Notes: generated from the letters alone by a model not told the origin. DNA of 64,000 nucleotides from Selaginella moellendorffii (GCF_000143415.4 NW_003314288.1:357838-421837), one strand, 5' to 3'; counted from the stretch's first letter, positions 1 to 37,500 are shown. A program made the numbers and translations.

Positions 1-1343
1 AGGTGGACCCGAGATGGACCCGAAATGGAGTCCGAGGTGGAGTCCGAGGTGGACCCGAGATGGACCCGAAATGGAGTCCGAGATGGAGTCCGAGATGGAC
101 CCGAGATGGAGTCCGAGGTGGACCCGAAATGGAGTCCGAGGTGGACCCGAGATGGACCCGAGATGGAGTCCGAGATGGAGTCCGAGATGGAGTCCGAAGT
201 CGAGACCGAGACCGGGACCGAGACCGAGACTGAGACCGAGACCGAGATCGGGACCGAGAACGAGACCGAGGCTGAGGCCGAGACCGAGCCCGAGCCCGAG
301 TCCGAGTCCGAGTCCGAGTCCGAGTCCGAGTCCGAGTTCGAGTCTGAGAGGGTGAAAGCCCAAAGCGTTCGTCTCCCAGACCCTGGGGGGTTTGGTGAGC
401 TCCAAAAGTATAGTAAGGGGGAGGACTGCAGTGGAGCCAGTTTGGCCAGGAAAGGCCAGTTTGGCCTAGGAAGGCCAGACCCAGTGTTGGGTGATGAGCT
501 GCCCACTGGGAAGTCCAAGACTAGAGTGAACACAGACCGACAAGCGGGGTAGCTTGGTGAAGTGTTCAAGAGCGGGCTCTAGTTCCCCTGGGAGATCAAC
601 TGGCCGATGCTCCCAGTCCAAGTGTGGGTGGCACTACCTACTTGGATACCTGGTGTGGCTCAACGGAACCCGCTCTAAGCCCATGGCTAGAGCACCTAAG
701 GGCAGAAGGCGAGAAGAGTACCCAGGTGGCTCGCGTAAGGCTATGGTGTTCCGAAATGTTGTCCCAAAGGCCCAGACTGTGGAAAGGAAGAGGAGCAGTC
801 CTTTGGGGTAGTGACCAAGGACACAGTCGTGTGGTGAGGAAGTCCCAGAGGACCGTGGGACTTAGTGGTCGGGCCTGTGGGTCTCGATCCAGTGGCAGTG
901 TTGGCAAACACGGCCAGGGGCAGAAAGGGACTTAGTGGGGACTGACAGAGGGATATTGGGGAAGGCTATTCCCCTTGTTGGTGGGCATCCTAAGGGTGCT
1001 AAGGAGTGGATCTCAAATGACCACTCACGGATGGTTTGCCTAGTGTTGGAGAGCCAAGACTGTGATGCAAGTGGTAATGGACTACCAGTGTGGCAAAGGT
1101 GATTGGGCATGGCCTTAGCGTAACGGGCTAGCATGTCGGTGGTACCTTTGAGTGTCGGTCATGGGATCGGACACGTGGAGCACTTGGACCAAGTGCAAAT
1201 GTTGAATGGCATGAATGCCATTCTCGGGGCTAGCAAATCCCAAGTCCTGGATTGGACTTATGGAGGTTGTGAATGAGACTCCTCCAAGTGGTCGGAGGTG
1301 TGGTTAAGTGACTAAAGTAGAATGGAAAATTTAGTCGCCTACA
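1..1343 (+). repeat. 5' LTR (partial) with internal minisatellite
   Basis: Ends ...TAGTCGCCTACA immediately before the PBS; matches the 3' LTR. Confidence 0.9.
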
Positions 1344-4300: not shown

Positions 4301-5451
4301 ATCACTAGGTGATCTTATGGCCAGATAAGGACAAGGTCCTTGGTTGGCTAAGGAATAAAGTTCCTGGTTCAAAATGTTGAAATTGAACTGTTTAAGATGG
4401 TGTGGCTTGGTCATGATGACCAAGTGGGAAGAGCACCTAAGGGAAATAAACTATGTCCATCCGATGGCATAGTGAGTCCGAGGAAAGTAGTCTCTATAAA
4501 AGACCCATGGGAGGGTCATGAAGTTGGGCCATGGATAGAGCCCATAGTGGAGGATGCTAAAGAGACGTACTAGGGGTGAACATCCTCCAGACTTGGCAAA
4601 GAAGAGTTTTTGCTATGGAACCGAAAGGATACCTAAAAAATGGAGGTAGCGATCCGATGTTGCTGGGTGCAGCAATCAAAGATAGGAGCAAAGGACTAGT
4701 GGCCAAGTTTGGGTCATGGAATTTAATGGAAGGGACCCAAATGGCAAAGTTAGCCAAGGAACACTAATGTGTTCGATGCTAACGGCTTGTAAAGGAAGTG
4801 GACTTCCAAGGATGGATTCCTAAGTGCTCCAATTTGGCGAAGTAAAAGCTCAAAGTGAGGGAGCGGTAAGGTAGCCAAATGATAGGGCCATGGACAGCCC
4901 TAGCACAAAGTATGATAAATAGAACTTAGTGCCCAAGGTGGCACGAAATAGAAGAGAGGATGAGGGTGCCCTCAAATAATGAACTTTCTAGGATGGGGAA
5001 GTGGAGTTGCACAATCTGTGCAATGCAAGGTGTTGGGGACACCTAGGAAATTGACTTTCAAAAAGTCAAAAGAGTAAAAGTTCCAAGGTGCAAACATTCA
5101 ATAGATGGAAAATGAGACTACTCGAGAAGGAGTAGTGGGATTGACTTAGAGAAGGGTCTCTAAGAGGTTTAGCGAGAACTAAACCAATAAAAGGAGAGAA
5201 CCACTACATGTGGTCCAATCAGTCTCTAAGTTGGAGAGACTACCCTCCTTAGAGGATAGACAAGGCATGGTGAGCCTTTGGTGCCAAACCATGGAGGCAT
5301 ATGCAAAAGGCATGGTGAGCCTTCAATGTCAAACCATTGACAAATATTGGCTAGGTGCCAAGGATGGAAATGGTAACACATGCGAGTGTTACTTTACAAA
5401 ATGGTTTACCGTTCGATGAGGACATCGAACTTCGTCTATGGGTGGTGGAGT

Positions 5452-7182
5452 TGTGAGACACAAAATCCCTAGGCCCCAAAGTGGAGCCGGAAAGGGTGCC
5501 ACGTGGTAGTGGCTGAAGCGAGAGCCAAACGAGCGTAACACGTTTGGACCAAAAGCTCCGACTTGAAAAGTCAAGAGCGGGAGTGGAACTCCCAACGAAG
5601 CGAGCAAAAAGCGAGGCTCCAAAAAGGGACCCAAAAGGACCAACATATAACACGTGGAAGTGTCCGAGATGGACTCGAGTTGGAGTCCAAAGTGGAGTCC
5701 GAGGTGGACCCGAGATGGACCCGAAATGGAGTCCGAGATGGAGTCCGAGGTGGACCCGAGATGGACCCGAAATGGAGTCCGAGATGGAGTCCGAGATGGA
5801 CCCGAGATGGAGTCCGAGGTGGACCCGAGATGGACCCGAAATGGAGTCCGAGGTGGAGTCCGAGGTGGACCCGAGATGAACCCGAAATGGAGTCCGAGAT
5901 GGAGTCCGAGATGGACCCGAGATGGAGTCCGAGATGGACCCGAGATGGAGTCCGAGGTGGACCCGAAATGGAGTCCGAGGTGGACCCGAGATGGACCCGA
6001 GATGGAGTCCGAGATGGAGTCCGAAGTCGAGACTGAGACCGGGACCGAGACCGAGACCGAGACCGAGACTGAGATCGGGACCGAGAACGAGACCGAGGCC
6101 GAGGCCGAGACCGAGGCCGAGGCCGAGACCGAGCCCGAGCCCGAGTCCGAGTCCGAGTCCGAGTCCAAGTCCGAGTTTGAGTCTGAGAGGGTGAAAGCCC
6201 AAAGCGTTCGTCTCCCAGACCCTGGGGGGTTTGGTGAGCTCCAAAAGTATAGTAAGGGGGAGGACTGCAGTGGAGCCAGTTTGGCCAGGAAAGGCCAGTT
6301 TGGCCTAGGAAGGCCAAACCCAGTGTTGGGTGATGAGCTGCCCACTGGGAAGTCCAAGACTAGAGTGAACACAGACTGACAAGCGGGGTAGCTTGGTGAA
6401 GTGTTCAAGAGCCGGCTCTAGTTCCCCCGGGAGATCGACTGGCCGATGCTCCCAGTCCAAGTGTGGGTGGCACTACCTACTTGGATACCTGGTGTGGCTC
6501 AACGGAACCCGCTCTAAGCCCATGGCTAGAGCACCTAAGGGCAGAAGGCGAGAAGAGTACCCAGGTGGCTCGCGTAAGGCTATGGTGTTCCGAAATGTTG
6601 TCCCAAAGGCCCAGACTGTGGAAAGGAAGAGGAGCAGTCCTTTGGGGTAGTGACCAAGGACACAGTCGTGTGGTGAGGAAGTCCCAGAGGACCGTGGGAC
6701 TTAGTGGTCGGGCCTGTGGGTCTCGATCCAGTGGCAGTGTTGGCAAACACGGCCAGGGGCAGAAAGGGACTTAGTGGGGACTGACAGAGGGATATTGGGG
6801 AAGGCTATTCCCCTTGTTGGTGGGCATCCTAAGGGTGCTAAGGAGTGGATCTCAGATGACCACTCACGGATGGTTTGCCTAGTGTTGGAGAGCCAAGACT
6901 GTGATGCAAGTGGTAATGGACTACCAGTGTGGCAAAGGTGATTGGGCATGGCCTTAGCGTAACGGGCTAGCATGTCGGTGGTACCTTTGAGTGTCGGTCA
7001 TGGGATCAGACACGTGGAGCACTTGGACCAAGTGCAAATGTTGAATGGCATGGATGCCATTCTCGGGGCTAGCAAGTCCCAAGTCCTGGATTGGACTTAT
7101 GGAGGTTGTGAATGAGACTCCTCCAAGTGGTCGGAGGTGTGGTTAAGTGACTAAAGTAGAATGGAAAATTTAGTCGCCTACA
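5452..7182 (+). repeat. 3' LTR (1731 bp)
   Basis: TG...CA termini, preceded by a PPT at about 5438-5451. Confidence 0.9.
5664..6188 (+). repeat. LTR-internal minisatellite: 11-12 bp GAGATGGAGTCC/GAGGTGGACCC units, then 6-bp GAGACC/GAGTCC units
   Basis: Visible directly; the same array occupies 1-348. Confidence 0.9.
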
Positions 7183-9159: not shown

Positions 9160-10730
9160 CTTCTCTCTCCTCACCTACTGTTCATCATAGTTGGAGCAGA
9201 GGGAAAAATGTCACCGTATTTCGTGATGAACCAGCTGATTCTGGACCTAGGTCTCTGATCAAAGAGCCAAATACCAACTGCAAATTTGCATGTGAAGAGG
9301 TGTTCAAGCATCTCCACGGGGTTTTCATTGCATAGAATACACAGAGTTTTGTGAACTGTGAACCAATCACCAACAGGGATCCTGTCCTGCACAAGAAGCC
9401 AGCTTACCTTAGCTTCCACCAGTGTCTTCCACATGTTCACAATGTACTTCCAATTCTTCAACTTCCGCATAAGCCTGGTGTCAATTTTATCCATCAAAAG
9501 CTCTCTGCCATGCTTAGACCTGTACATAAAAAAAGACACACTGAACTCATTACCTTCCCAGGATAACTGAGCCGGATCCTATATAAGATCAGATTTAGGT
9601 ACTCCCCAAACTAGTGTATTGCAGAGCATTCTCCCAGTTGAACCTTAGAATCCAGTTCAGTGTATTTCCCTCTCGGATGTATCGTCCTGATCCTTTTACC
9701 GAAGGCCATCCTGGGAACTGGGACCTCCTCGGGAACTATACATGGAAACAGTGCACCACTGTTATGGGGATAAAAAACAATACCTTGAGGTGATGGGGTT
9801 GTTTCCATAACAAAGATGATTTGAGTCTCAGCACCATCAAGCATTATCCAATCACGAACCTCGATAACTTCAGTTTGTAAAGCAAGATGAAGGCGATCAC
9901 AAGCGATGCTGCCTTAAGCTTTGATGTGGAGTTTTCATCCTGGGTTGTAATGGGTTGTCATGAGGCCATCCGATGAGCAGGGTTTGCTCCAAGCGGACGT
10001 CAAACAAATACCTGACTTGACCTTTTTCATTGTATCATACCTTGTCCACTGCTGAGGAAGAAAAACAAGATCCCAACAAGAACTTTGCTGTAAGTGATGG
10101 CTTGCTAGCTCTTTGTAGATCCAATAAGTCTTTGATCTAAGCTCCCACATTTCTATGCCACCTAGGCCAAAGACCTCTACCCAAGCCTGGAGCTGAACAA
10201 TCACCTATATACTGTTGATTACTGTTCTTATGCGCTACGTTGAAGAACAAGCGATCAGCTAATGCCTCTGTCAGATTCTGGTTCTTTCTGACTTAACCTG
10301 GGTAGGAGTGTGACTTCCATACCTTCAACATCTCTTTTGCTATTCCATCCTGGACCTTCTTTGTGTTGAGAGGAGCAGTGCCAATCGATTCCTTGTTTCT
10401 AGTTACCACCCTGTCTAGGCAAGATCTTCAGTTTCGTGGATATAAACCTGACACAAGAACTTTGAAGAGAAGAGCTTTGGATTGAATTCCTGGGTGTGGC
10501 ACATTCCGAATAACTCACTCTACTTTTGCCCGGACTTTGCACCCGCTGGAGTTTCTAAAGTTTCTACATATGTCGTTGGAGATCAAGTGTTGGTGAGTTA
10601 TCGGGTGTTGCAGATCCAAGGTTTTTGCTGCGTAGGTCCTTATCACATCATCCAACAAGTTGGTCCACAAATCTATGTGGGGCACTCAATGCACAACGTC
10701 AAGAGAAGATCCATGTGAAGCAGTTAGCTC
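9160..10730 (-). mobile_element. LINE (L1-like) ORF2 remnant: RT C-terminus and zf-RVT region
   Basis: WKTLVEAKVSWLLVQDRIPV...CILCNENPVEMLEHLFTCKFAVGIW (zf-RVT-like) and WVEVFGLGGIE (GGLG-like motif); fragmented. Confidence 0.7.
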
Positions 10731-12844: not shown

Positions 12845-13030
12845 GAAGAGTTTCGTGTGGTAAGGTATGTTGCGGAGCAGCCAGAAGCCCAGGGTGAATA
12901 TAAGTACGTGAGGCCTTGTGAGGTTTTACCGCCGCCCGAGGACTCCTATGCATGGGCCCCAGGCGAGAGTCATTTGCGAAAGTGTTCTGCATGAAACTGG
13001 TGCCCTGAGGCTTCTGGCCGTGTCGCCCCA
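12845..13030 (+). pseudogene. Possible Agenet/Tudor-like fragment
   Basis: VVRYVAEQ...VRPCEVLPPPEDSYAWAPGE...GFW loosely resembles the Agenet pattern; frameshifted. Confidence 0.2.
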
Positions 13031-13483
13031 TGAAGATGATTTTTTATTTAATTTGTGTAGAGTGTGGTTTATTTTTGCATATTGAGTGTATCAATATCTT
13101 TTAGTTAGCAGATTATATTGAAGAACTGAAGACTACCTACAATTAAGTGCATGCAGCAACAGATTATATAAAAAATGAATGCAGAGAATAACAAATCGGG
13201 ATTTCTAGGAAGTTCGTGAGTGTTGTTAGTAATAATAATAATAATCATAAAAACATGATGTTCAGCCAGTTAGAAGATTGTCTGAAAATTATGCATGTAC
13301 TGATTCTTCAGCTCTTGAGCAACTGATTGCTGCTGGCTCACTTTCTATATATATAAAAGAGACAATAAACATCTAAGCTGCTGCAGTTAAGCTGTGACAT
13401 TATAAAGTTTAAAAAGGAAAAGAATTAGAAAAAGAAAAAACAGAAAACACAGTTAAGTACTAACAAATCGGGATTTCTAGGGT

Positions 13484-16400
13484 ATGCGTGCGGCGCTAGG
13501 GTTTGTGTGGTGTGTGTCATTTCTCAACAATCTCATGGAGTGGAAAACGTTTTTCAGGGATCCCACTTTCTGGTGGGACAACAGGTTCAAGAAGAAAAAC
13601 AAGTTCTTCTCAGAGTCCTACCCGGATTTCAAACATGTTTCTACCGGAGAGAGCCTGTGGATCGCCAACAGGAAAACACCAACCTGGGTCTCTGCAAAAC
13701 TCGAGTCGCTCGCTGACCCAGCTGTAGGTAAGGCCGCCACGGCCCGCTACAAATCTCCACATACCCCACCTGTAGCTGGTGATGAACCGGTGAGTTTAGG
13801 GAGGCTGATACACCGCGTGAGAGACTCAGCTGAGAGCAGATCCCTTTCTTTGGGAAAACAAGCCCATGAAGCTGTGCTCAAGAGTGATGAGCACAAAAGC
13901 AACATCTACTTGTTGACGGGATTGATCGATATGTACTGCAAGTGTGGAGAGCTTGAGGAGGCTCGCAAGATTTTCGACTCCATGGGAACCCGGAGTGTTG
14001 TGTCCTACAACGCGATCATCCAGGGCTGTGGCTCGAACGGGCAAGCTGAACTTGCTCTGGAGTACTACTCTGCCCTGACAGTTGATAACACCATTCAACC
14101 CGACGATCGGACTCATGTCGCGGTGATCAGTGCCTGCTCCAGACTTGCTACCGAATCCAGCGAGAAGAGGGAGAGAGCTCTACGCATCGGGATGGAGATC
14201 CATTCAATGCTGAGCAAGGAGAAGAAACAGGTAGATCTGTTCGTGGCGACTTGCCTGGTAGACATGTACTGCAAGTGTGGCGAGCTTGAGGAGGCTCGCA
14301 AGATTTTCCACTCCATGGGAACTCGGAGTGTTGTCTCCTACAATGCGATCATCCACGGCTGCAGCTCGAACGGGCAAGCTGAACTTGCTCTGGAGTACTA
14401 CTCTGCCCTGAGAGCTGATAACACCATTCAACCCGACGATTGGACACATGTCGCGGTGATCAGCGCCTGCTCCACACTTGCTACCGAATCCAGCGAGAAG
14501 AGGGAGAGAGCTCTACGCATCGGGATGCAAGTCCATTCAGTACTGAGCAAGGAGAAGAAACATCTAGATCTGTTCGTGGCGAATTGCCTGGTAGACATGT
14601 ACTGCAAGTGTGGCGAGCTTGAGGAGGCTCGCAAGATTTTCCACTCCATGGGAACTTGGACTGTTGAGTCCTACACCGCGATCATCCAGGGCTGCAACAC
14701 GAACGGGCGAGCTGAACTTGCTCTGGAGTACTACTCTGCCCTGAGAGTTGATAACACCATTCAACCCGACGATCGGACTCATGTCGCGGTGATCAGCGCG
14801 TGCTCCAGACTTGCTACCGAATCCAGCGAGAAGAGGGAGAGAGCTCTACGCATCGGGATGGAGATCCATTCAATGCTGAGCAAGGAGAAGAAACAGGTAG
14901 ATCTGTTCGTGGCGACTTGCCTGGTAGACATGTACTGCAAGTGTGGCGAGCTTGAGGAGGCTCGCAAGATTTTCCACTCCATGGGAACTCGGAGTGTTGT
15001 GTCCTACACCGCGATCATCCAGGGCTGCAACACGAACGGGCGAGCTGAACTTGCTCTGGAGTACTACTCTGCCCTGAGAGTTGATAACACCATTCAACCC
15101 GACGATTGGACTCATGTCGTGGTGATCAGCGCCTGCTCCACACTTGCTACCGAATCCAGCGAGAAGAGGGAGAGAGCTCTACGCATCGGGATGGAGATCC
15201 ATTCAATGCTGAGCAAGGAGAAGAAACAGCTAGATCTGTTCGTGGCGAATTGCCTGGTAGACATGTACTGCAAGTGTGGCGAGCTTGAGGAGGCTCGCAA
15301 GATTTTTCACTCCATGGGAACTCGGAGTGTTGTGTCCTACAACGCGATCATCCAGGGTTGCGGCTCGAATGGGCAAGCTGAACTTGCTCTGGAGTACTAC
15401 TCTGCCCTGAGAGCTGATAACACCATTCAAGCTGATGCTTGCACCTACACCTGCGTCCTTGTTGCTTGCGGGAGTGTGATGGCGATCAAGCTCGGGAGGG
15501 AGATTCACCAGCTGGCGAAGCATAAAGGGCTGCTGAAAAACAATCCAGTTCTGGGCTCCAGCCTGGTGAGCTTCTACGGCAAATGCGGTGATGTTGATTC
15601 TGCTCAGGAAGCGTTTGACGAGTGCCGAGCTCGGGACGACACGGCTCTCTGGAACTCTCTCATACAGGCTTACACTCTCCAGGGCCGATCGATCGAGGCC
15701 TTGGAGCGTTTCTATTCCATGACTCAGGAGGAGGGCTGTAAAGCTGACGATGTGAGTTTTGTTTCGGTGTTGAACGCTTGCAGCCATGGTGGTCTGGTCG
15801 GGAAAGGAAGGCAGCTTCTGGATGAAATGCCCAAGCAGTATGGAGTCAAGCCACGTCTGGAGCATTATGTGTGCCTGATCGATATGCTCGGGCGAGCTAA
15901 CCTCCTCGACGAAGCTGTGAGAGTTCTCAGAGCCATGCCTTTTGAACCGGATGCAGTGGTTTGGACGTCCCTGCTCGGAGCCTGCCGGAAGTGGAAGAAT
16001 TACACGATCGGCAAACTCGCGTTTGAGCGTCTTGTGGAGATGGATCCCAAGAGCGGCACGCCCTACGCATTGATGGCCAATATATTTGGAAACCTGGGGA
16101 TGCTCAGTGAAAGGGCCGCTGTTGTGGAGAGAATGAGAGGTGAAGGCAGCTTCAGGGAGCCCGGGAGAAGCTGGTGGACGGATGTTTGCTCAGGAAAAGT
16201 GCATTCTTTTTCTGTCGAGGATAGGAGTCACTCACAGAGCGACGAGATTGCGGCCAAGCTCAAGCAATTGTTGCTGAGAATGAAAGAGGAGGGGTATGCG
16301 AGCGATGTGATCAACGTTCTAAAAGACATACCCGAGGAAGAGAAAGAGGATCACCTGTGCGGCCACAGTGAGAAGCTTGCGCTGGGGTGTGCTCTGGTGA

Positions 16401-16573
16401 ACTCGCACCAGAAGGAGACCATCAGAATTGTGAAAAATCTCCGAGTTTGTGACGATTGCCATGCGGCCACTGCTCTCATCTCTAAGCTGGAAAAAAGGCT
16501 AATCATCTGCAAAGATGCCAGTCGGGTTCATGTGTTCCAGGATGGCAGATGTTCCTGTGACAACTACTTTTGA
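13484..16573 (+). CDS. PLS-class PPR protein with E1/E2 and DYW cytidine-deaminase domain, plus an N-terminal PDF (OSB-type ssDNA-binding) motif
   Basis: Intact 1029-aa ORF (true start may be the ATG at 13535). S/P/L triplets, P2-L2-S2 (LEHYVCLIDMLGRAN), E1 (AVVWTSLLGAC), PG box PGRSW, HSEKLA, KNLRVCDDCH, C-terminus CSCDNYF. N-terminus WKTFFRDPTFWWDNR...PDFKH..TGESLW...PTWV. Confidence 0.95.
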   Translation: MRAALGFVWCVSFLNNLMEWKTFFRDPTFWWDNRFKKKNKFFSESYPDFKHVSTGESLWIANRKTPTWVSAKLESLADPAVGKAATARYKSPHTPPVAGDEPVSLGRLIHRVRDSAESRSLSLGKQAHEAVLKSDEHKSNIYLLTGLIDMYCKCGELEEARKIFDSMGTRSVVSYNAIIQGCGSNGQAELALEYYSALTVDNTIQPDDRTHVAVISACSRLATESSEKRERALRIGMEIHSMLSKEKKQVDLFVATCLVDMYCKCGELEEARKIFHSMGTRSVVSYNAIIHGCSSNGQAELALEYYSALRADNTIQPDDWTHVAVISACSTLATESSEKRERALRIGMQVHSVLSKEKKHLDLFVANCLVDMYCKCGELEEARKIFHSMGTWTVESYTAIIQGCNTNGRAELALEYYSALRVDNTIQPDDRTHVAVISACSRLATESSEKRERALRIGMEIHSMLSKEKKQVDLFVATCLVDMYCKCGELEEARKIFHSMGTRSVVSYTAIIQGCNTNGRAELALEYYSALRVDNTIQPDDWTHVVVISACSTLATESSEKRERALRIGMEIHSMLSKEKKQLDLFVANCLVDMYCKCGELEEARKIFHSMGTRSVVSYNAIIQGCGSNGQAELALEYYSALRADNTIQADACTYTCVLVACGSVMAIKLGREIHQLAKHKGLLKNNPVLGSSLVSFYGKCGDVDSAQEAFDECRARDDTALWNSLIQAYTLQGRSIEALERFYSMTQEEGCKADDVSFVSVLNACSHGGLVGKGRQLLDEMPKQYGVKPRLEHYVCLIDMLGRANLLDEAVRVLRAMPFEPDAVVWTSLLGACRKWKNYTIGKLAFERLVEMDPKSGTPYALMANIFGNLGMLSERAAVVERMRGEGSFREPGRSWWTDVCSGKVHSFSVEDRSHSQSDEIAAKLKQLLLRMKEEGYASDVINVLKDIPEEEKEDHLCGHSEKLALGCALVNSHQKETIRIVKNLRVCDDCHAATALISKLEKRLIICKDASRVHVFQDGRCSCDNYF
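13928..15430 (+). repeat. 333-bp (111-aa) coding tandem repeat, about 4.5 copies of an S-P-L triplet
   Basis: DMYCKCGELEEARKIF codons start at 13928, 14261, 14594, 14927 and 15260. Confidence 0.95.
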
Positions 16574-17152: not shown

Positions 17153-18346
17153 ATCAACCAGCAGATGCACAAATCGTTGAGAATTAGCAACAAGTGNNNN
17201 NNNNNNNNNNNNNNNNNNNNNNNNNNNNNNNNNNNNNNNNNNNNNNNNNNNNNNNNNNNNNNNNNNNNNNNNNNNNNNNNNNNNNNNNNNNNNNNNAGAA
17301 GAGTAGAAACAAATTAAGAAATGTAAATTAAGAAGTGCAAAAGAGATGAAAATAAAAATTGTCCATCCTAATCAGTTTGCTGAAATTAAGTTGGATTCAA
17401 TTCTTCCAGCTCCAAATATTGTGTGATTGAGTTGTAAGTTAATTAATAGTAGAAAATAAGAAAAAAAACAAACATTGAAAAAATAGTGTTTGATAATATC
17501 TTCTTTGCTTTTAGTTTTTTATTTTCGAAAGAAAATTAGTGGGGGAGTGCTGGTAAAGATATCTTTGCCGTTCATTGGTGGTTAATTAAATGAGCATGTT
17601 TAGAGATGTTTATAAGAGTTTAGCTCTGGACCAAGAGTTACCCGAAAATTAAAGTTCAAAATTTACGTTTTCCCTATTTGCACAATAACTTAAGCTAAAG
17701 TAATGTACTTACCCTTATTTTTTATGGGAAAATTATTAGTATTTTGGATTCGCACGGAAAAAAAGGGAGGATTCTTAAGTAATTTTCAAAATCCCCGACC
17801 AAATCTAAAGTGTTGGGGTCATTTTATTTTAAGGGAAGTTGTTAAAAATTATTCCGGAAATATTCGAGAAGATCCTTAGGTTAGGGTGATCTTGCGGCAC
17901 AGCCGGTAATCCAATTTTAGGGTTGGAAGAGGAAACAGAGCTCTGGGAAATGGGGCCGATCGAGCTGGATCTGGGCCTGCTCTTGCTCTATCTTCACCAA
18001 CAGGAGGAGGAAGAGGTGCCCATGGAGGGAGAGGTGGCCATGGAGTGGGAGGAGGGCGCGGGGTGGCCGGGGTTGGCCGCGGATCTCTGAATCTGGCCCT
18101 GGGAGGATTAGGCCATGGTTCTGAGGTGACTCGAGGAGGGGGTGCCCCGGGAGGAGGAGGCCATGGTTCTACCCTAGGAGGAGGATGCCGCAGTTCTTCT
18201 CCAGGAGGAGGAGGCCATGGATCATCACCAGGAGGAGGCCAAGCCTTGGTGGGAGGAGCCGAAGCCACAGCGGGAGGAGTCCAAGCCACGCCCAGAGGAG
18301 CCCAAGCCATGTCCAGAGGAGTCGATCCAATTCGCAACATCAATAG

Positions 18347-20186: not shown

Positions 20187-22566
20187 ATATATGTGTGCAA
20201 ATACTAAACAGGTAATACACCTTGTGGGTGTTCTTTTGCAAATAGCCTGCAGAAAAAAAGCTATTAAAATAAATATTTGATTTGTAAAGAATACTTGATG
20301 CATTAAAAATATAAGCTTATAAAACACTTTTTCTCCATCTAGCATGTCATAGAGGACAAAGTAGCAATCTATTTAAATTATAACTCAATGTAGATTAAAA
20401 TCACTAAAGGATGATCCTAATGATTCAAAACAACTATTATACTTGTCTCAAAAGGCTAGCAATATTCTAATCTGAATACCAATACTGGATTTGGAATGAT
20501 GCTAGACTGGGAACTGAAGTATAACTCTAGTTGAGTCTAGTATTCCTAAGAGTTTAAGAATGATTAAGATTGTACTCCAATATGTTAGTTTTGAAAAATT
20601 TCATATACTTATATTCCATGATATTGGAAGAGAAGAGAATAGATTGGTCATGAAACATTGAACAAGTGCTAGTTGCCATTGAAGAAGCAATAGTGCTCTA
20701 TACAACAACATTATATATAAAACTCCACCCTGCAGAATAGAAAGAAAGTTTTCGAAGGGAATGGATGAGTAGGAAATGGCACTTGTGATATTTCTTATTT
20801 CCAATGGGGAGAATTGTTTGGGATGTTGAGCATCCCTGATTGCTATGCTAGATAATATGTTTGATAACATATGTCAAACTTCTCATCATCAAATTACTTA
20901 ACTATCCTTCATTATGCATATATTAATTCCTAAAGCTCTCCAAGGATTTGGTTCTTGACAGATTATGGCATTGACTTTGCGGAAGATTTGATAAATTTCC
21001 TTGTAAAATCGCCTTGCATACATGCTTTGCAAAGAACAATCCAGTCAACATAGATTAAGCCCATCATAAAAGTGGGCCAATTGTCTTTAAACTTAATTCT
21101 CTGTATCAACATCCAATGAAGCCTTTGTAAATGCTAGCCATCAACGAATGGGCTGAGGCCCAGCTCCAGCAACATGCTGTGCAATGCTTCGCAAGCGGAG
21201 AGGATACCATATGGAACACAGAGAGGAGAACATATGAAGCATGTCGGGAGGCAACCAGGAAGATAGGATACAAATGGGAACGAGCTATCACCTTACTGCA
21301 ATGAGCCCATCTCCACCTGCGCCTCAAACGCAAGCTTTCCACACCACTACTTCCCACTTTCAACAAGAGCTCATGAGAGACTTCCACAGCTCACTCTCAC
21401 CGGCATGGTCTTGAGAATCTGGATTACCACGCCTAGCATGGCACTGATGTGGAGCAGGAGGAGCGCAGTGCTGCTGCTGAAATTCACAACAGCAGCATTG
21501 GATCTTACATTGCTGACTATAGCAAACCCACTGCACTTAACATTCCAGATGCATGGGACACCACGGACTCATACACAAGAGGCGGAGGACTATGCTCCTC
21601 ATGAAGACTCTCCTATGCTCAATCCTCTGTGCGTCCCGCTCTCCATCCATGGGGGATGGGGTGGCTCACGGAATGGCTGGATATCAACGATCGATGTTTG
21701 GGTCAACACATCAAAACAGTGAAGAATCAAGTCTGAACTGCTCTGAAGATGTTCTCCAGCATCACATAAGGCAATGCATCACTCACAAGGCTGGACTGGC
21801 ACGTAAATTCCGCAGCATGCATCCCTCGATTCATCTCCCCGTGGTTTTTACACGCGGTAAGAAACGTTGCCCATGAAACTCCATCAGCTGGCAAAGGCAT
21901 ATTCTCCAGGACATCCTCGGCCTCTTCCAATTGCCCTAGCCGTCCTAGAGCATCAACAATGCAGGTGTAGTGGTCTTGCGAAGGGTCCAATCCATTGTCA
22001 AAGCTCATTGCCGTGAAGTAGCTTACTGCTTCCTTGACAAGCCCCAGATGGCTACACTCCGTCAAAACAAGGGCAAACACTGCCTTGTCGGGATCAAAGC
22101 CGTGAAGAAACATCGCCCAAAATAGCTGGATCGTAGAATACGTATGGCCAGTCTGGGCATATGCTGCTAGCATCGTGTTCCAGGAGACCAAATTCCAAGT
22201 TGGTATTCTATCAAATGCCTTCTTTGCATCACAAATATTTGCATCTAAAGCATATGCCATGAGAATTGTGTTCCATGAATAGGAATCCCAGCAGCAACAC
22301 AAAGAAAACCCTCGTATAGCGTCTTTGAAATGATCTCTCTGGGCATAAACAGTGATTATCGAGTTCCATGAAACAAGATCTCTGTGTGGCATTGCTTCAA
22401 ACAATTGTTTTCCTTGATCAGCGTTGCCTTTTTGTGTGTATGACTTGATCATAATTGTCCACAAAAGTATGCTGTGCAGAGGCATCCTATCAAACAAACT
22501 CTTGGCTTGAATCAAATCCCCATTTTGGGCATAGCAGCAGTGCATTGCCCCCCAGAGGATTGCGTT
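20187..22566 (-). repeat. Left arm of an inverted segmental duplication (partner 27657-29475)
   Basis: 20881 TCTCATCATCAAATTACTTAACTATC is the reverse complement of ~28730-28755; the PPR coding parts are also homologous. Confidence 0.9.
21727..22566 (-). pseudogene. PLS/E-class PPR gene, 3' part (5' end replaced by a gypsy remnant)
   Basis: LVSWNTMLAAYAQTG, DHYTCIVDALGRLGQLEEAE, E1-like VSWATFLTACKNHG. Confidence 0.85.
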
Positions 22567-22569
22567 CTC

Positions 22570-25240
22570 CAAGTAGACCGCAACCAAGTCTAAGGTAGTG
22601 ACTCAAGGATAAGTGTCACTTATAGTACTCAAGGATATAAGCTTTTATATTCCTCCAATAGAAATTGTGCTTAATCAACTCATATGTCTTCTTACCCCCA
22701 AAATGACTAGCCTCTTGACAATTATGATAGTGAAATAAAACCTGAATAATTAATGCATCCACTTGTGGCAAATATATATGGCCATTGTAGTAAAGAATCC
22801 CATCCACCAATGAAAAAGGTGCTTTCATCTGGGCTTGCAATGAGACCACCTCAACATCTCGAGCCTAAACACACTCAACCAACTATGCTAACCATCTTAC
22901 TTAAAAATGATAGCAAAACCATGTTTATAACGCTATCACATGGCAAATATGAGATAAAGCATCTGCCACCATATTTGATTTTCCCAGACAATGCTCAATA
23001 GGAAACTCCCCAAATTCCATAAGTTTGACTATCCAATGAACTTACTTAGTGTTCAACTCCTTTTGTGTGAAAAAATATACAAAGGGTTTGTGATCTGTCA
23101 ACACCATGAACACTGCACCATAAAGATAGTGTTGCCACGTAAAGCATGAACAATGGAAAGTAACTTTTGCTCATATATGGAATAGTATTGCTCCGTGAAA
23201 TTCAAAGTTCAACTCTCATATGCAATAGGTTACCCTTTTTGCATAAGAACTCCTTCCAGTGCATAACCACTCGCATGACATATCACCTCATAAAGTTTTG
23301 ATGGATTAGCAATGTGAAGCACTGGAGCGTCGCTTAACAACCGTTTCAATGCCACAAAACTATCCTCATGTGGTTTCTTCCACTTGAATGGCACGTTCTT
23401 GTGCAACAATCGTGCTAAAGGAATAGCCACCTTTGCAAACTTATGCTGAAAATGTCAGCAATAACTAGCCATACTAAGAAAACTACGTAACTCAGCCACT
23501 AAAGTTGGTGTAAGTTAGTTCTCCACCATAGCCACCTTCCCTGGATCCGTCTTGACACTCTTGGATGTTATAATATAGCTTAGACATTCCATCTTCAACT
23601 TTGCGAACTCACATTTGCTCTTTTTCATATAAAGTTTGTTATTATGGAGTAACAAAAGAACCTTACGCAAATGCACCTTATGCTCTTCCATAATTTTTCT
23701 GAAATGGATGCTAGTAAATTGGCCGTGTCCCCAGCTCCAACGTAATCCCATGCTCCACACGTCATAATCGAGGCAATCCATGAGGAATTTTAGAGGGAAA
23801 AACATTAGAGAACTCTTTGAGTATAGTCTGCACTACTGCCTCTCCTCCACACGTGGCTTGGTCCCCCAAGTTATAAACAAACAGTAAGTAACTCAAAAGT
23901 GTTTTTCCATTACGACAAGCCCGCTTCAAAGATGTAGTGAAGAGCATAACAACTAAAGGTTGAACTCCCTCTTCAAACCACACATCGTTAATGCCACTGT
24001 ACTTCACACTTAATACTCCACTTTATCTCCGAATCCACCTTCACCAACTATGACATCCCAAGAATGAGATCCACATGATGAAGATCTGTGAGATAAAAAG
24101 TCTCCACAAGTGTGGTTTTGCCAACCAATACTTCCAGCCTTTTTACACAAGTATCGAAATGCCGAGTAAAGGTAACTACACCTTTTACCATATATGGAAG
24201 AACTTTTTGTGTCACCAAGCCATGCTCCTCAACAAACTTTGTGGAAACAAAGTTGTCATCACTTCCATTGTCCAATAAAATCTACATTGAACTGCCACGG
24301 AACACACCCTCTAGCAAGCTGATGCACAAGTGTCCTCGACCTTCATTTTGTTCCACACACAGTTAAGTTGATGAACAACAATTAAAAGCCTCTTCCTCCA
24401 ACTAGAATGGTCATCCTCGTCATCTTTGCGTTGCAAATCTTAGTATCTAACTTACCATTAGTAGAAGATTGGCCATTCTTGTTGCCATGTTATTTGCTCT
24501 TCACTGTGGACAATCAGATTTGTAGTGTCCTAACTTGCTGCAATGATGACAACTTTATCTAAAATTCTTCACAAAGAATTTCTGATTCTTTGACCCCTGT
24601 GTACTTGAAGTAGCCACTATAGACTTCAGCTTGTGATGTTTATTCCCATCCTTGTGTCCACAACAATCATCATGACGATTTTCAACAGAAAGACTCCTCG
24701 AACACTTGTGAAACTTATATTTGTCATTGTCAAGTCGACGAGCAGCATCAAAGACCTCTTCCAAACTCTTTGTACATTGAGAATGACGCAAGTGTTGCCG
24801 CATGCTTTCACTATGATGGCCATCAATGAAGTAGGACTTGTTTTGATTTGGATCTTTTATTGGAACACGGCTAATCAAGCAAGTTAGCTTCTCAATATAG
24901 TCCCCAAGCTTTATTTTCCCTTGCTGAAAATGTCGAAGTTCAGTGTGAGCATTCTCATATCATAGTGAGGAGTAAAACGTAAATGGAAAGCAACCTCAAA
25001 CTCATCCATTGTAGACACTAATGGTTTTTTATCCACAACACAAGACTCCTCAAGTTAATTCCACCACCAAAGACTTACATCACACAAAACCATTGAAATA
25101 TCTATTAAAGCCTTTGCATCCAGAATTCCTTTAGTAACCAAAAACTTCTTCACATTAACTAGCCAAGCTAGACACTCATCCACACCACCATCACCAGAAA
25201 AGGTTAGAATCTTGAGTCAATCCAACCTTTTCTTCATTAG
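22570..25240 (-). mobile_element. Decayed Ty3/gypsy gag-protease-RT-RNaseH-integrase start
   Basis: DNGSDDNFVS/DLILG (protease), HLRKVLLLL..NKLYMKKSKCEF (RT), DAPVLHIA...HASGYALEGVLMQ (RNase H), GHIYLP...HFGGKKTYELIKHNFYW (integrase Zn region). Confidence 0.85.
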
Positions 25241-27098: not shown

Positions 27099-28444
27099 AT
27101 GGCGCGCGTAGCTCACAAGCCGTCGTCTTGGTGGGATGAAACGCTGGTTGTCTACGGGCGGTGTGGGCATTTGGAGGAATCGAGAAGGAAGAACATCGCG
27201 TCGTGGACGTCTCTCGTGACCGCGTATGCCGAGAGTGGGCATCCGGGGGAGGCCAAGGCAGCGTTCGATCGAATGGCGGTATGGGACGTAGTTTCCTCCA
27301 CTGCGATGGTCAAGGCGCTGGGCGATTGCGGGCGGATTGGATCGAGCAAGGCGGTGTTTGATGCGATGCCCGAGAGGAACTGCAAGACGTGGGCGACGCT
27401 GCTGCGAGGATTTGCTCGCGGCGGAGAGATTGGGCGAGCGAGAGAAGTGCTGGATCGGATGCCCGAGACGAATGTGGTAGCGTGGACGATCCTCGTGCAG
27501 GGTTTCGCGCAGCGCGGGCGAGTGGGCGGTGCGAAGGCCGCGTTTGATTCCATGCCCGAGAAGAACAGCATCACTCGCGCGGTGATGCTCGTCATGTTTG
27601 CGGAGAATGGATTCGTGGAGGAGGCGGAGGATGTCTTCCAGGAAATTGTCCACCGAAACGCGATCCTCTGGGGCGCGATGCACTGCTGCTATGCCCAAAA
27701 TGGGGATTTGATTCAAGCCAAGAGTTTGTTTGATAGGATGCCTCAGCACAGCGTACTTTCGTGGAAGATTATGATCAAGTCATACGCGCAAAACGGTGAT
27801 GCTGATCAAGGAAAACACTTGTTTGAAGAAATACCACACAGAGATCTTGTTTCATGGAACGCGATAATCGCTATTTATGCCCAGAGAGGTCGTTTCCGGG
27901 CGTTTTCTTTGGTTTGCTGCTGGGATTCCTATTCATGGAACACAATTCTAGTGGTATATGCTCTAGATGTAAATATTCGTGATGCTAAGAAAGCGTTCGA
28001 TGAGATGCCAGCTTGGAACTTGCTCTCCTGGAACACGATTCTTGCAGCATATGCCCAGACCGGCGATCCAGCTCTTCTGGGCGATGTTTCTTCACGGCTT
28101 TGGCCCCGACAAGGCAGCGTTTGACATCGTTTTGATGGCGTGTAGCTATCTGGGGCTCGTCAAGGAAGCAGTAAGCTACTTCACGGCAATGAGCTTTGAC
28201 TATGGATTGGATCCTGCACTACACCTGCATTGTTGATGCTCTCGGACGACTAGGGCGATTGAAAGAGGCCGAGGATGTCCTGGAGAATATGCCTTTGCCA
28301 GCAGATGGAGTTGCATGGGCAACGTTTCTTACCGCGTGCAAAAACCACGGGGAGATGAATCGAGGGATGCATGCTGCGGAATTTACGTGCCAGTCCCTTG
28401 TGAGTGATGCATTGCCTTATGTGATGCTGGAGACTCCTCTCTGA
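27099..28444 (+). pseudogene. S/SS-motif-rich PLS/E-class PPR gene with frameshifts
   Basis: 31-aa repeats (FDRMPERNVVAWT-type). The frame is broken near 28065 and 28215, and the 3' end is deleted relative to the inverted copy. Confidence 0.85.
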
Positions 28445-34564: not shown

Positions 34565-37500
34565 ATTTGGTATCGGAGCCTCTTCCTCAGTTCTAGCGAA
34601 GGATGGAGGCGGATTGCTGGGAGATGGCAAGGGCAGGACGTAAGCAAACCCAGGCGGAGACGGAACCTCCTCCAGAGCTGGAGCCTCCGGTCGAACAGGA
34701 GGCTATGGATGAGGAATCCTTGGATGAGGAGGACTCCAGTGAGGCAACTTCCAAACAGGAGTCTGGTGGTGAGGTTCAGTCGTCCAAGGCTCGATTGGAC
34801 GTTCTAGAAGGACAATTGGCGCAGACCAATGCTCTGCTGGAGACTCTCGTACCCAAGCTAAAGCGTGATGAGAAGCGGAAGAAAAAGCGAAAGACTGCGG
34901 ATGCTGGCAGCGTAGAAGGTGCGGACCCTTCAGTAGGGACTGAGGTAAAACCAGACCAGGTCGAACAGACCGAAGTGGAATCAGTCCCTCAGGCAGTTCC
35001 CAAGTACAAACCAAAGCCCCCACCGATCTTTAAGGGAGTGAACGACTATAAGGTGGTGGAGGATTGGTTTTACGATATGGAGGACTACTTCCGAGTGTTG
35101 CAATTACCGAGCTCGGAGAAGGTCCCATGTGCAAAACCATACTTGGCAGATAATGCCAAGTCTTGGTGGAGAACAACAAAGGCCAATGAAGGACCAGTGG
35201 CCACTTGGGAAATGATGAAGGCGAGGATTCGCACAACTTACGTTCCTCCGAATGCTACTCTGCATCTAAGGGACAAGCTGAGTAGGCTGAAGAAGACCGG
35301 AACCATTCAAGAGTATGTGAATGGGTTTATGGCAAAGAGGATACTTGTCACGGACATGGGGGATATGGATGCGTTCCATGCCTTCATATCAGGTTTGCAA
35401 ACCTAGGCTCGCGGCAAAGTGATGCAGTGGAACCCGACCAACTACAAGGAAGCGTTGGATGTGGCCATCAAGGTGCATTTCAACGATAACCTGCGAAAGG
35501 GGAACACGACGGGGTCAGGATCCACATTTAGCAAAGGGGCCAAACCAAGGGGAACATTTAGCAAAGGGGAATTCAAGAAGAGTTTCTCTAAGAATGAGTC
35601 CTCGGGGTTCCGGAAAGGTAGATCCGGTGGCCAGCGAGCGAGTACGTGGGGGAGTCAAGCGAAAAGAGACAAACCCACGGATAAGAAGGTCAAGTCGTAT
35701 AGCAGCATGGGAAACAACGTATGCTACAACTGCGGTGAAGCGGGACACTTTTCGAGGGAATGTCCCTACCTGAAGAAGGCCAGAGCCAATATGGCCATCA
35801 AGTTGGGTGAAGTCCAAACTGAGGTACGTGATCCAGTCCCTAACTCAAAGTTACTCATTACACGAGCAACTTTGGTAGAGAGTCGTTCGCGACATCTACT
35901 AGCCCTCCGAGGGAAGCTCGGAGGTAGCTTTGTTAAGATCCTTATTGACACGGGTGCTTCGGATAATTTTGTGGCTGCAGACATAGTCTGGCAAGCCGGA
36001 CTAACGGTGCAGCAGCTAGGCGAACCAAGGACTATAGAGTTTGTTCAAGGTAGCCAAAGCACCGATGAGGTACTTTGACAAGCGAGAGTCGAAGTGGGGA
36101 CTTGGAAGGTGGACATGGATTTCACTGTGTTGGACATGGTGGGATTTGACGTGATCTTCAGAATGGACTGGTTCAATCGATTCGTGGTAGCCCTACATGG
36201 ACAAGGTAGAAACCTTGTGGTACTGGCGAATGCCCAAGGAATAAGATCTAGGGTGGAGGCCCAAGATCTAAAGGTAGGGCAAAGCAAGGCCAAAGATTCC
36301 TTCTTAAACCTGGTGTCCACAAGAGGACAACTCACTAGGCGGCCTTTTTATGCTTACTCTCGGTGAAGAGTGACAAAAAGACAGAAATGAAAGAAGTACC
36401 TTTAGTGATCCAGTGGGTGTTGGACCAGTTCCAGGATACCATGCCAGAGGCGCTACCAGCGGGGCTACCCCCAGCACGACCGATAGAACATAAGATTGAG
36501 CTGGTCGAGGGTGCTGAGGCAGTGGTTCGTCCCCCTTATCGTTTGAACGAAAAAGAACTCAAGAAGCTCAAGTGCCAACTAGAGGAGTTGGTGGACAAAG
36601 GGTATGTTAGGTTGAGCAAGTCACCATATGGGCCGCCGGTGTTATTTGTGAAAAAGAAAGATGGATCTATGCGCATGTGCATAAACTACCGGTTGCTCAA
36701 CAAGTATACAAAGAAGAACAAGTACCCTTTGCCTAGGATTGAGGACCTGTTCGATAGGTTGGGAAAGGCAAAATACTTCTCGAGGATTGACCTAAGGTCA
36801 GGATACTACCAGATCAGGGTAGCCGAGGAAGATGTCGAGAAGACAACCTATCGAACGAGGTATGGGAGCTTTGAGTTTCTGGTGATGCCTTTTGGGCTAT
36901 GTAATGCGCCGGCAACGTTTTCGGCACTAATGAACCACATCTTTGTACCCTATCTGGATCACTTCATGGTCGTCTATATCGACGACATCCTGATCTATAG
37001 CGAGACACTAGAGGAGCATGCCGAACACTTGGCGAAGGTGTTTGAGAAACTAAGGGAACACAAACTGTATGGTAAAGAGAGCAAATGTGACTTTGCTCAA
37101 CAAGAGGTAAAGTTTCTCGGGCATGTGGTGGGCCAGGACAGGCTCAAGGTGGACCTGGAGAAGGTCCAAGCGATCCAGGAATGGGAGCGACCATTGAATG
37201 TACACGAGTTGAGGGCATTCCTGGGGCTATGCAACTACTATCGAAAGTTTATCAAACACTATTCGAGAGTAGCCCTGCCCTTAACGGACCAAACAGGAAA
37301 AGGGAAGATGGTGTGGACAGCGGAATGCGAGGCGGCATTTGTCCACCTCAAAGGGAAGTTGAGGAAGGCTCCCGTATTGGCATTACCAGACTTTGGTAAG
37401 GACTTTGAGGTAGAAACGGATGCTTCGGACTTTGCGTTGGGCGCAGTTTTGAAGCAAGACAACCATCCGGTAGCGTTCTTCTCGAAGAAGTTGGACAAGG

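What the first reader, a model, noticed from the sequence alone, without database searches (positions are those of the whole stretch)
13928..15430. TALE-like PPR array: near-identical 333-bp repeats shuffled at base-specifying positions
Seen: five S-P pairs and four L motifs repeat with an exact 333-bp period and very high DNA identity. The 5th/last residues are S: T/S, T/S, N/T, T/S, N/S and P: N/D, N/D, T/D, T/D, N/D. P-motif variants run N,N,T,T,N while the L-S variants alternate a,b,a,b, so the array is a mosaic and not a simple duplication. Established: the 5th and last residues set base preference (N/D=U, T/D=G, N/S=C; T/S tends to A). Inference: recent unequal crossover or gene conversion is reprogramming target specificity. 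The rough predicted target is A U n A U n C G n A G n C U n G U upstream of the edited C. Some non-code positions also vary.
Basis: partly seen in the sequence, partly recalled or inferred. Interest (0 to 1): 0.75.

Follow-up and report, generated by a model that had tools for sequence, protein, structure and literature searches.

The report
Shuffled repeat modules in RNA-editing gene
A spikemoss (Selaginella) gene for an organelle RNA-editing-type enzyme has enlarged its RNA-reading part with four extra, almost identical 111-residue blocks whose pieces have been swapped by DNA recombination; this changes the RNA sequence the protein is predicted to read, but no target or activity has been tested.

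Summary
Window 13931-15430 is a 333-bp tandem array of 4.5 copies, 93-97% identical, with no indels. It lies in frame inside one intact 1029-codon ORF (13484-16573, +). The ORF encodes a PLS-class PPR-E-E+-DYW protein, and its closest relatives are Selaginella moellendorffii proteins.

The mosaic is also real. Four sites in the P motif group the units 12|34, and four sites in the L motif and S start group them 13|24. The two sets do not interleave, so recombination is the best explanation.

"TALE-like" is overstated. 17 of the 20 variable codons are not code positions, and code residues travel inside linked cassettes. Code positions are still enriched for variation (3 of 4 S/P positions, p=0.018; family-wide 4 of 4, p=0.005). 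The array as a whole is under weak purifying selection (omega about 0.46).

A paralog (XP_024532426.1) has the same architecture with no array. Public models of other copies are truncated or spliced through the repeats.

Reprogramming of the RNA target is predicted, not shown. The scan has met this gene family before on other DNA of this genome. I found no published description.

The parts
13484..16573 (+). Intact ORF of 1029 codons plus stop: a PLS-class PPR-E-E+-DYW protein. The true start may be the ATG at 13535 (MEWKTFF...), where paralog model P0002 begins.
13535..13709 (+). N-terminal region conserved in paralogs. Other readers flagged it as an OSB-type PDF motif. No Pfam family matches it, and I did not analyse it further.
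13781..13903 (+). L0, the first PPR-like motif (41 aa), upstream of the array
   Evidence: helices in the model
13904..14236 (+). Unit 1: S (13904-13996, T/S), P (13997-14104, N/D), L type a (14105-14236). Its first 27 nt are diverged and mark the left edge of the array.
14237..14569 (+). Unit 2: S (T/S), P (N/D), L type b. It carries a private cluster of 6 changes within 36 nt (14528-14563).
14570..14902 (+). Unit 3: S (N/T), P (T/D), L type a. It carries a private cluster of 3 changes within 11 nt (14657-14667) that includes the last residue of S.
14903..15235 (+). Unit 4: S (T/S), P (T/D), L type b
15236..15436 (+). Half unit 5: S (N/S) and P (N/D). Array similarity ends at about 15430-15444.
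15437..15748 (+). Non-repeated L1 (T/N), S (S/D) and P (N/D) motifs
   Evidence: sequence read directly
15998..16282 (+). E (aa 839-897) and E+ (aa 906-933) motifs
16292..16570 (+). DYW cytidine-deaminase domain with HSE, CDDCH and the PG box intact. The C-terminus is ...CSCDNYF.

Best explanation
The locus is an intact nuclear gene of Selaginella (closest relatives are S. moellendorffii proteins). It encodes a PLS-class PPR protein with E, E+ and DYW deaminase domains, the type that directs C-to-U editing of organelle RNA.

Its RNA-binding tract is L0, then S-P, then four L-S-P blocks, then L1-S-P-L2-S2-E1-E2. The tract was lengthened by tandem amplification of a 333-bp (111-aa) module. Because the module is a multiple of three and of whole PPR motifs, the solenoid stays in register.

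The near-identical units then exchanged segments by unequal crossing-over and gene conversion, both within the array and probably with paralogs. A simple history fits the data: a two-unit (666-bp) duplication, then overwriting of the P motifs of units 3 and 4 by a 'T-type' P cassette, then short conversion tracts in units 2 and 3.

Each cassette carries a 5th or last residue, so exchange alters the number and order of predicted base contacts in the distal part of the binding site (about -10 to -22 from the edited C). The proximal part and the deaminase are nearly identical between paralogs.

What is shown: the architecture, intact catalytic motifs, the mosaic, copy-number differences between paralogs, and weak purifying selection. 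What is inferred: the order of events, RNA binding by the added motifs, the change of target, and any adaptive value.
For: Array and ORF. Domains: PPR, E, E+ and DYW in Pfam. HxE, CxDCH and the PG box align with solved DYW structures 9kfx and 7o4e.

The AF2 model of aa 100-755 has mean pLDDT 81 and is an unbroken run of helix pairs. Its best structural matches are the PPR-DYW 9kfx, PPR10 and the designer PLS protein 5iww.

Mosaic: sites with a 2:2 split among units 1-4 fall as aabb at columns 106, 127, 129 and 139, and as abab at columns 204, 238 and 327 plus S5 of the next unit. No site shows abba. The two sets are perfectly sorted along the unit (chance 0.029), and only one of the eight sites is a CpG transition. 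Block distances are discordant: P3 vs P4 differ at 1 of 108 nt while P1 vs P3 differ at 8; L-S1 vs L-S3 differ at 2 of 159 nt while L-S3 vs L-S4 differ at 6; S2 and S4 are identical over 66 nt.

Paralogs: P0002 (XP_024532426.1) has no array. P0001, P0123, P0168 and P0240-P0248 carry the same cassettes in other combinations, including P-last N, which gives N/N and T/N.

Selection: 21 nonsynonymous and 13 synonymous events, omega about 0.46, p=0.025 against neutrality.

Code positions enriched for variation: within the array 3 of 4 against 17 of 107 (p=0.018); family-wide 4 of 4 against 27 of 107 (p=0.005).
Against: There is no evidence of expression, organelle targeting, RNA binding or editing.

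Most variable residues are not code positions, so cassette exchange may be selectively neutral.

T/S and N/T are poorly characterised code pairs, so the predicted target is soft.

The assembly has gaps nearby, and the genome holds many near-identical paralogs plus two haplotypes. Part of the mosaic could therefore be an assembly chimera.

The paralog data are protein models only, several of them mis-spliced.

The enrichment tests use few positions and units that share descent.
Confidence: 0.7

Rival explanations
1. Neutral repeat dynamics. The structure and recombination mechanism are the same, but the array is only a recombination-prone repeat in a redundant, recently multiplied gene family. 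Copy number and cassette order drift, and the changes at code positions are hitch-hikers with no effect on function or no selected effect.
For: 17 of 20 variable codons are non-code. The highest-entropy positions are S25, P13 and P12. Pairwise dN/dS ranges up to 0.96-2.0 for some unit pairs. Many near-identical paralogs exist. One published count gives S. moellendorffii 3,861 PPR genes (PMC13386178).
Against: Omega for the array as a whole is about 0.46, significantly below 1. Position 5 toggles only between T and N, the two canonical residues, in both S and P motifs. Code positions are enriched for variation. The ORF and catalytic motifs are intact.
Confidence: 0.3
2. Assembly artefact. Reads from alleles or from the many near-identical paralogs were merged, so the copy number and/or the mosaic pattern of this array are not those of any real locus.
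For: The window contains four N gaps, the nearest 620 bp downstream of the stop codon. The family has many copies that are over 90% identical across several scaffolds. Clusters of private changes (6 in 36 nt; 3 in 11 nt) could be paralog reads.
Against: The frame is uninterrupted over 3.1 kb and the period is exact. Units differ about every 15-35 nt, enough to anchor reads that span more than one unit. The same cassette reassortment appears in independent models on other scaffolds.
Confidence: 0.08
3. Decaying or non-functional copy. This gene is a redundant paralog on its way to becoming a pseudogene, and the array has no role.
For: No expression data are available. No public full-length model matches it. 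There is no obvious transit peptide before the conserved N-terminal region (sequence read directly; this point comes from other readers).
Against: The ORF runs 1029 codons in a window of 41.7% GC. HxE, CxDCH and the PG box are intact. Omega is below 1. The C-terminal 390 aa differ from P0001 at only 2 residues.
Confidence: 0.1

Closest known systems
PLS-class PPR-DYW organelle RNA-editing factors (for example Physcomitrium PPR56/PPR65; the synthetic PLS-DYW structure 9kfx; the OTP86 DYW domain 7o4e)
   Same: P, L and S motifs in triplets followed by E1/E2 (Pfam E, E+) and a DYW deaminase with HxE and CxxCH. [quoted passage not shown] The gene is a single uninterrupted ORF.
   Different: Twelve of its roughly 20 motifs are four 93-97% identical copies of one 111-aa S-P-L block, whereas motifs in known factors are typically only distantly alike. 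The array L motif has 44 residues, with a second helix predicted to be 20 residues long. The N-terminus carries a conserved non-PPR region. The C-terminus ends in NYF and not DYW.
Restorer-of-fertility-like (RFL) P-class PPR gene clusters (Melonek et al. 2016, PMC5075784)
   Same: In both, PPR motifs are duplicated, deleted and moved by unequal crossing-over and gene conversion between clustered, similar genes, and this is proposed to change RNA recognition.
   Different: RFL genes are P-class, have no deaminase, occur in angiosperms, and are tied to the conflict over cytoplasmic male sterility. Here the unit of exchange is a sub-block of a PLS triplet inside a DYW editing-factor gene of a lycophyte, and the units are far more alike.
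TALE effector repeat arrays
   Same: Tandem, near-identical protein repeats, each reading one or a few nucleotides through a few specificity residues, and prone to recombination.
   Different: In TALEs the variation is almost confined to the two RVD residues. Here 85% of variable positions are outside the code residues. The unit holds three motifs (about 3 nt), not one, and the fold and ligand (RNA) differ. The likeness is an analogy and does not indicate relatedness.
Monotypic S-type PPR arrays of Selaginella editing factors (the basis of the synthetic dsnS scaffold; PMC8809517)
   Same: Same genus, and both are unusual regular PPR arrays in DYW-type factors of a plant that lacks MORF cofactors.
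   Different: Those arrays consist of 31-aa S motifs only and are not described as near-identical at the DNA level. This one is an S-P-L triplet array with 93-97% DNA identity.

Membership tests
PLS-class PPR-DYW RNA-editing factor | Tandem PPR motifs | tested here: met
   PF13041 E=9e-79, PF01535 E=1e-70, PF12854 E=1e-48. The model is all helix pairs and matches PPR structures.
PLS-class PPR-DYW RNA-editing factor | Alternating P, L and S motif types (triplets) | tested here: met
   My register gives S 31 aa, P 36 aa and L 44 aa (36 aa for L1), repeating in that order. The motifs were assigned by eye against Pfam consensus positions, not with the PPRfinder tool.
PLS-class PPR-DYW RNA-editing factor | C-terminal E1/E2 (E, E+) motifs | tested here: met
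   PF20431 scores 36.5 bits (cut-off 27.3). PF20430 scores 21 bits (cut-off 24), so E+ is slightly below its cut-off.
PLS-class PPR-DYW RNA-editing factor | DYW deaminase domain with zinc-binding HxE and CxxCH and the PG box | tested here: met
   PF14432 E=3e-31. The alignment to 9kfx and 7o4e shows HSE, CDDCH and EPGRSW conserved. The terminal tripeptide is NYF and not DYW.
PLS-class PPR-DYW RNA-editing factor | Import into mitochondria or plastids | not testable with these tools
   No targeting predictor was available. Only 17 residues precede the conserved N-terminal region in the ORF. The upstream exons in paralog model P0245 look spurious.
PLS-class PPR-DYW RNA-editing factor | Site-specific C-to-U editing of an organelle transcript | not testable with these tools
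   93-97% DNA identity, exact 333-bp period
   3 of 20 variable codons are code positions. The top-entropy positions are non-code. There is enrichment, but variation is far from confined to the code positions.
RFL-like recombination-driven PPR evolution | Recombination signals between motifs or genes | tested here: met
   Incompatible, spatially sorted site partitions and discordant block distances. Cassettes are reassorted among paralog models.
RFL-like recombination-driven PPR evolution | Diversifying selection at positions 5 and last | tested here: inconclusive
   Variation is enriched at code positions (p=0.018 and 0.005), but omega for the whole array is 0.46 and no per-site test is possible with 4-5 copies.
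RFL-like recombination-driven PPR evolution | Genes lie in genomic clusters | not tested
   Only earlier scan notes place further copies 46 kb upstream and 283-559 kb downstream on the same piece. I could not read that DNA.

The most novel reading that the evidence does not exclude
Selaginella has a natural 'cassette system' for making new RNA-editing specificities. A clustered family of PPR-DYW genes shares one proximal reading head and deaminase. It diversifies the distal reading tract by amplifying, deleting and reassorting near-identical S-P-L modules that carry alternative code residues (S5 T/N, P5 T/N, P-last D/N). On this reading, new editing factors arise by recombination, not by point mutation, which would help explain how hyper-editing lycophytes keep thousands of sites served.
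Probability: 0.25. Interest if true: 0.8.

Novelty: new variant of a known kind. Interest (0 to 1): 0.55.

Why it matters
How plants with thousands of organelle editing sites acquire matching specificity factors is an open question. Current accounts stress whole-gene duplication, including retroposition (PMC13386178), followed by point mutation.

This gene and its paralogs suggest another route. The reading tract is built from interchangeable, almost identical triplet modules, so one recombination event can add, remove or reorder several base contacts at once.

The family also offers natural PLS modules that tolerate being stacked in identical copies. That is of practical interest for designer PLS-type editors, and synthetic PPR work has already drawn on Selaginella motifs (PMC8809517).

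It is an annotation warning too. No full-length model of an array-bearing member exists in the protein collection searched. The public models are truncated or spliced through the repeats, so surveys based on annotated proteins may have missed this architecture.

Tried and rejected
1. Chimeric origin of the array L motif (first helix from L1, second helix from L0, as a simple duplication junction would give). Global alignments score L1 above L0 over the whole motif (36 vs 27), and both are only about 30% identical to the array L. The idea is not supported. The array L is an old L motif with a 9-residue insert, which the model shows as an extension of the second helix (helix 127-146 of the model).

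2. P0002, the copy with no array, as the ancestral state. The array L plus the S start (159 nt) has no close counterpart anywhere else in the gene or window, so the array cannot be derived from a P0002-like gene by simple duplication. A single unequal crossover between two S-P blocks, on the other hand, yields P0002's architecture. I therefore read P0002 as a collapsed derivative. This is an inference.

4. Literature. Six full-text searches and several papers gave no description of near-identical PLS-triplet arrays in Selaginella. The two most relevant surveys are not held in the library (Cheng et al. 2016 Plant J; Gutmann et al. 2020 Mol Plant), so prior description cannot be excluded.

5. 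Paralogs within the window. The two other PPR ORFs are only 18-35% identical.

I reran it using window coordinates 14903-15235 as the reference.

7. The large representative-protein search was not used. The word search and family scans left nothing open.

Full report
OBSERVATION. Tandem Repeats Finder reports one strong array at 13931-15430: period 333, 4.5 copies, 94% matches, no indels, score 2692. The repeat finder gives five copies spaced exactly 333 nt apart. The four full units are 93.1-97.3% identical pairwise, and the fifth copy follows them for about 170-180 nt. Nothing else in the 64-kb window resembles the unit.

The array lies in frame inside a single ORF, 13484-16573 on the + strand, of 1029 codons. 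No assembly gap touches the gene; the nearest is 17197-17296.

WHAT THE GENE IS. Pfam finds many PPR motifs, then an E motif (aa 839-897), an E+ motif (906-933, slightly below its cut-off) and a DYW deaminase domain (937-1028, E=3e-31). Aligned with the solved DYW structures 9kfx and 7o4e, the catalytic HSE, the CDDCH zinc site and the PG box are all present. The protein ends in CSCDNYF and not ...DYW.

The best database relatives are Selaginella moellendorffii proteins (86-90% identity over the parts that align). All other hits, from lycophytes, ferns, gymnosperms and angiosperms, are at or below about 42%. The window therefore comes from S. moellendorffii or a very close relative.

In the register S (31 aa), P (36 aa), L (44 aa), the tract reads L0, S1-P1, four L-S-P blocks, L1, S, P, L2, S2, E1, E2, DYW. 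I checked each residue.

The 5th and last residues are the accepted determinants of base choice (review PMC11897456). L motifs contribute little to recognition (PMC7190159, listed). From my own knowledge, though, T/S and N/T are weakly characterised pairs, so I would write those positions as R and Y.

STRUCTURE. An AlphaFold2 model of aa 100-755, made without an alignment, has mean pLDDT 81 and is an unbroken series of helix pairs. Its best Foldseek matches are the synthetic PPR-DYW 9kfx, PPR10 and the designer PLS protein 5iww. The nine extra residues of the array L motif, relative to L1, are modelled as an N-terminal extension of the second helix, which is 20 residues long. The amplified block is thus compatible with a continuous PPR solenoid. 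This is a prediction only.

THE MOSAIC. Among units 1-4, every site with a 2:2 split falls into one of two incompatible groupings.
- 12|34 at unit columns 106, 127, 129 and 139, in the P motif (first helix and loop, including P5).
- 13|24 at columns 204, 238 and 327 plus column 13 of the next unit, in the L motif and S5.

No site shows 14|23. The two classes are perfectly sorted along the unit, which has a chance probability of 2/70 = 0.029. Only one of the eight sites is a CpG transition, so recurrent mutation is an unlikely cause.

Block distances tell the same story.
- P3 and P4 differ at 1 of 108 nt, while P1 and P3 differ at 8.
- L-S1 and L-S3 differ at 2 of 159 nt, while L-S3 and L-S4 differ at 6.
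- The S remainders of units 2 and 4 are identical over 66 nt.

Private changes are clustered: 6 within 36 nt in unit 2 (14528-14563) and 3 within 11 nt in unit 3 (14657-14667, including the S-last S-to-T change). That pattern suggests short conversion tracts more than independent point mutations. A history that fits is a 666-bp two-unit duplication (giving a-b-a-b for L and S), then replacement of the P motifs of units 3 and 4 by a T-type cassette, then small tracts. This order of events is inferred.

ARE CODE POSITIONS SPECIAL? Within the array, 20 of 111 codons vary in amino acid and 9 more vary only synonymously. Three of the four S/P code positions vary (S5, S-last, P5), against 17 of the other 107 (Fisher p=0.018). 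Counting the L positions as code positions too gives p=0.07.

I then collected every ungapped stretch of the unit from 13 public S. moellendorffii protein models plus the window. All four S/P code positions vary (S5 T/N, S-last S/T, P5 T/N, P-last D/N), against 27 of 107 others (p=0.005; entropy rank test p=0.0005). At position 5 only T and N occur, the canonical purine and pyrimidine readers.

So code positions are enriched for variation. Three caveats apply. The most variable positions are the non-code S25, P13 and P12. The code residues are linked to neighbouring non-code changes and move with them as cassettes. The units are not independent samples, and some models are allelic duplicates or include the array's edge unit.

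Over the array I count 21 nonsynonymous and 13 synonymous events (omega about 0.46; binomial p=0.025 against neutrality). Pairwise values run from 0.10 to 2.0. The array is therefore under weak purifying selection overall, and no array-wide positive selection is detectable.

PARALOGS.
- P0002 (XP_024532426.1, 566 aa) has the same N-terminus, one S-P pair, then L1 and an identical downstream architecture. It has no array and is about 97% identical in the C-terminal half.
- P0001 (XP_002987361.2) differs at only two residues over the last ~390 aa, but its model jumps between repeats and so looks like a prediction spliced through the array.
- P0123, P0168 and P0240-P0248 are partial models on at least seven scaffolds.

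They carry the same cassettes in other combinations. Examples are QL followed by S5=T, P5=T with GCGL or with NTNGQ, and an ACTTIQPN variant that puts N at P-last, giving N/N and T/N pairs that are absent from this window.

None of these models is this window's gene. No protein in the searched collection covers more than 56% of it at high identity. No protein outside S. moellendorffii exceeds about 38% identity to a three-unit query.

The array L plus S start has no close counterpart elsewhere. I therefore infer that an array of at least 1.5 units is ancestral to the family, and that P0002 is a collapse product of unequal crossover.

Dating, flank comparison and allele-versus-paralog assignment remain open.

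EARLIER NOTES OF THIS SCAN (leads, not evidence). The same 333-bp/111-residue array family was reported at several other places in this genome. Those notes give 4 to 9 units, about 14 copies, some on the same piece 46 kb upstream and 283-559 kb downstream, and one other 4.5-copy array on another piece. My paralog comparison from public protein models agrees with their picture of cassette reassortment and copy-number change. I could not check their counts. Other notes flag the N-terminal PDF-like motif and a PPR subfamily with extended L motifs. Here the L insert is shorter and is modelled as helix.

COMPARISON WITH WHAT IS KNOWN. The gene meets every sequence-testable criterion of a PLS-class PPR-DYW editing factor. 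Targeting and activity are untested.

The evolutionary mechanism has a published precedent in angiosperm RFL genes: motif duplication, deletion and transfer by unequal crossing-over and gene conversion, altering predicted RNA recognition (Melonek et al. 2016, PMC5075784). Regular S-only arrays are known in Selaginella editing factors (PMC8809517). Expansion of lycophyte PPR genes has been attributed mainly to dispersed duplication with retroposition (PMC13386178).

I found no description of near-identical S-P-L triplet arrays with cassette exchange in a DYW factor. The two key surveys are not in the library. The TALE comparison is an analogy that fails on its main feature, the confinement of variation to specificity residues.

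VERDICT. The best explanation is amplification and recombinational reshuffling of a PLS module inside a probably functional editing-factor gene, changing the predicted distal RNA contacts (confidence 0.7 for the structural and evolutionary part). The functional consequence is inferred. The rivals are neutral repeat dynamics (0.3, which overlaps in mechanism), an assembly chimera (0.08) and a decaying copy (0.1). Novelty: a new variant of a known kind. Interest: 0.55.

Noticed in passing
window 13189-13218 and 13461-13490: A 30-nt direct repeat (87% identical) lies 272 nt apart just upstream of the gene. The second copy overlaps the ORF's first ATG (13484) and ends in a splice-acceptor-like tttctag|G, so the true 5' end and start codon of the gene are uncertain. 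Paralog model P0002 starts at the ATG corresponding to 13535.
   Followed up: partly
window 9408-10157 (-) and 12881-12991 (+): The first 155 residues of paralog model P0245 (XP_024532189.1) match these stretches at 79-95% with in-frame stops and on mixed strands. At least about 4 kb of upstream flank is therefore shared between paralog loci, which points to segmental, DNA-level duplication and not retroposition. The N-terminal extension of that public model is probably spurious.
   Followed up: partly
window 13535-13709: The N-terminal region (MEWKTFFRDPTFWWDNRF...PDFKH...LW) is conserved in paralogs P0002, P0242 and P0245 and matches no Pfam family. Other readers of this scan call it an OSB-type PDF ssDNA-binding motif. 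Only 17 residues precede it in the ORF, which seems too few for a transit peptide.
   Followed up: no
window 21727-22587 (-) and 27099-28124 (+): Two further PPR ORFs, both with Pfam PPR matches. They are only 18-35% identical to the array gene, and the second continues to about 28429 in other frames, so it may be frameshifted or split.
   Followed up: partly
window 34603-35406 and 36363-37643 (+): Gag and reverse-transcriptase/RNase H ORFs of an LTR retrotransposon.
   Followed up: no
window 1-330 and 5662-6024: A satellite-like repeat with a 23/46-bp unit (CCGAGATGGAGTCCGAGATGGAC...) occurs at two places about 5.5 kb apart. The second lies inside long ORFs (5351-6408, -) that match no Pfam family.
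   Followed up: no
window 45880-46696 and 63006-63204: A 414-bp tandem duplication (2 copies, 88%) and a perfect 98-bp tandem duplication (2 copies, 100%).
   Followed up: no
protein P0121 (S. moellendorffii, 578 aa): This PPR protein is 37% identical to the array and has much longer acidic, serine-rich inserts in its L motifs. The 9-residue insert of the array L may be a short form of that extended-L type, which this scan has noted elsewhere.
   Followed up: no
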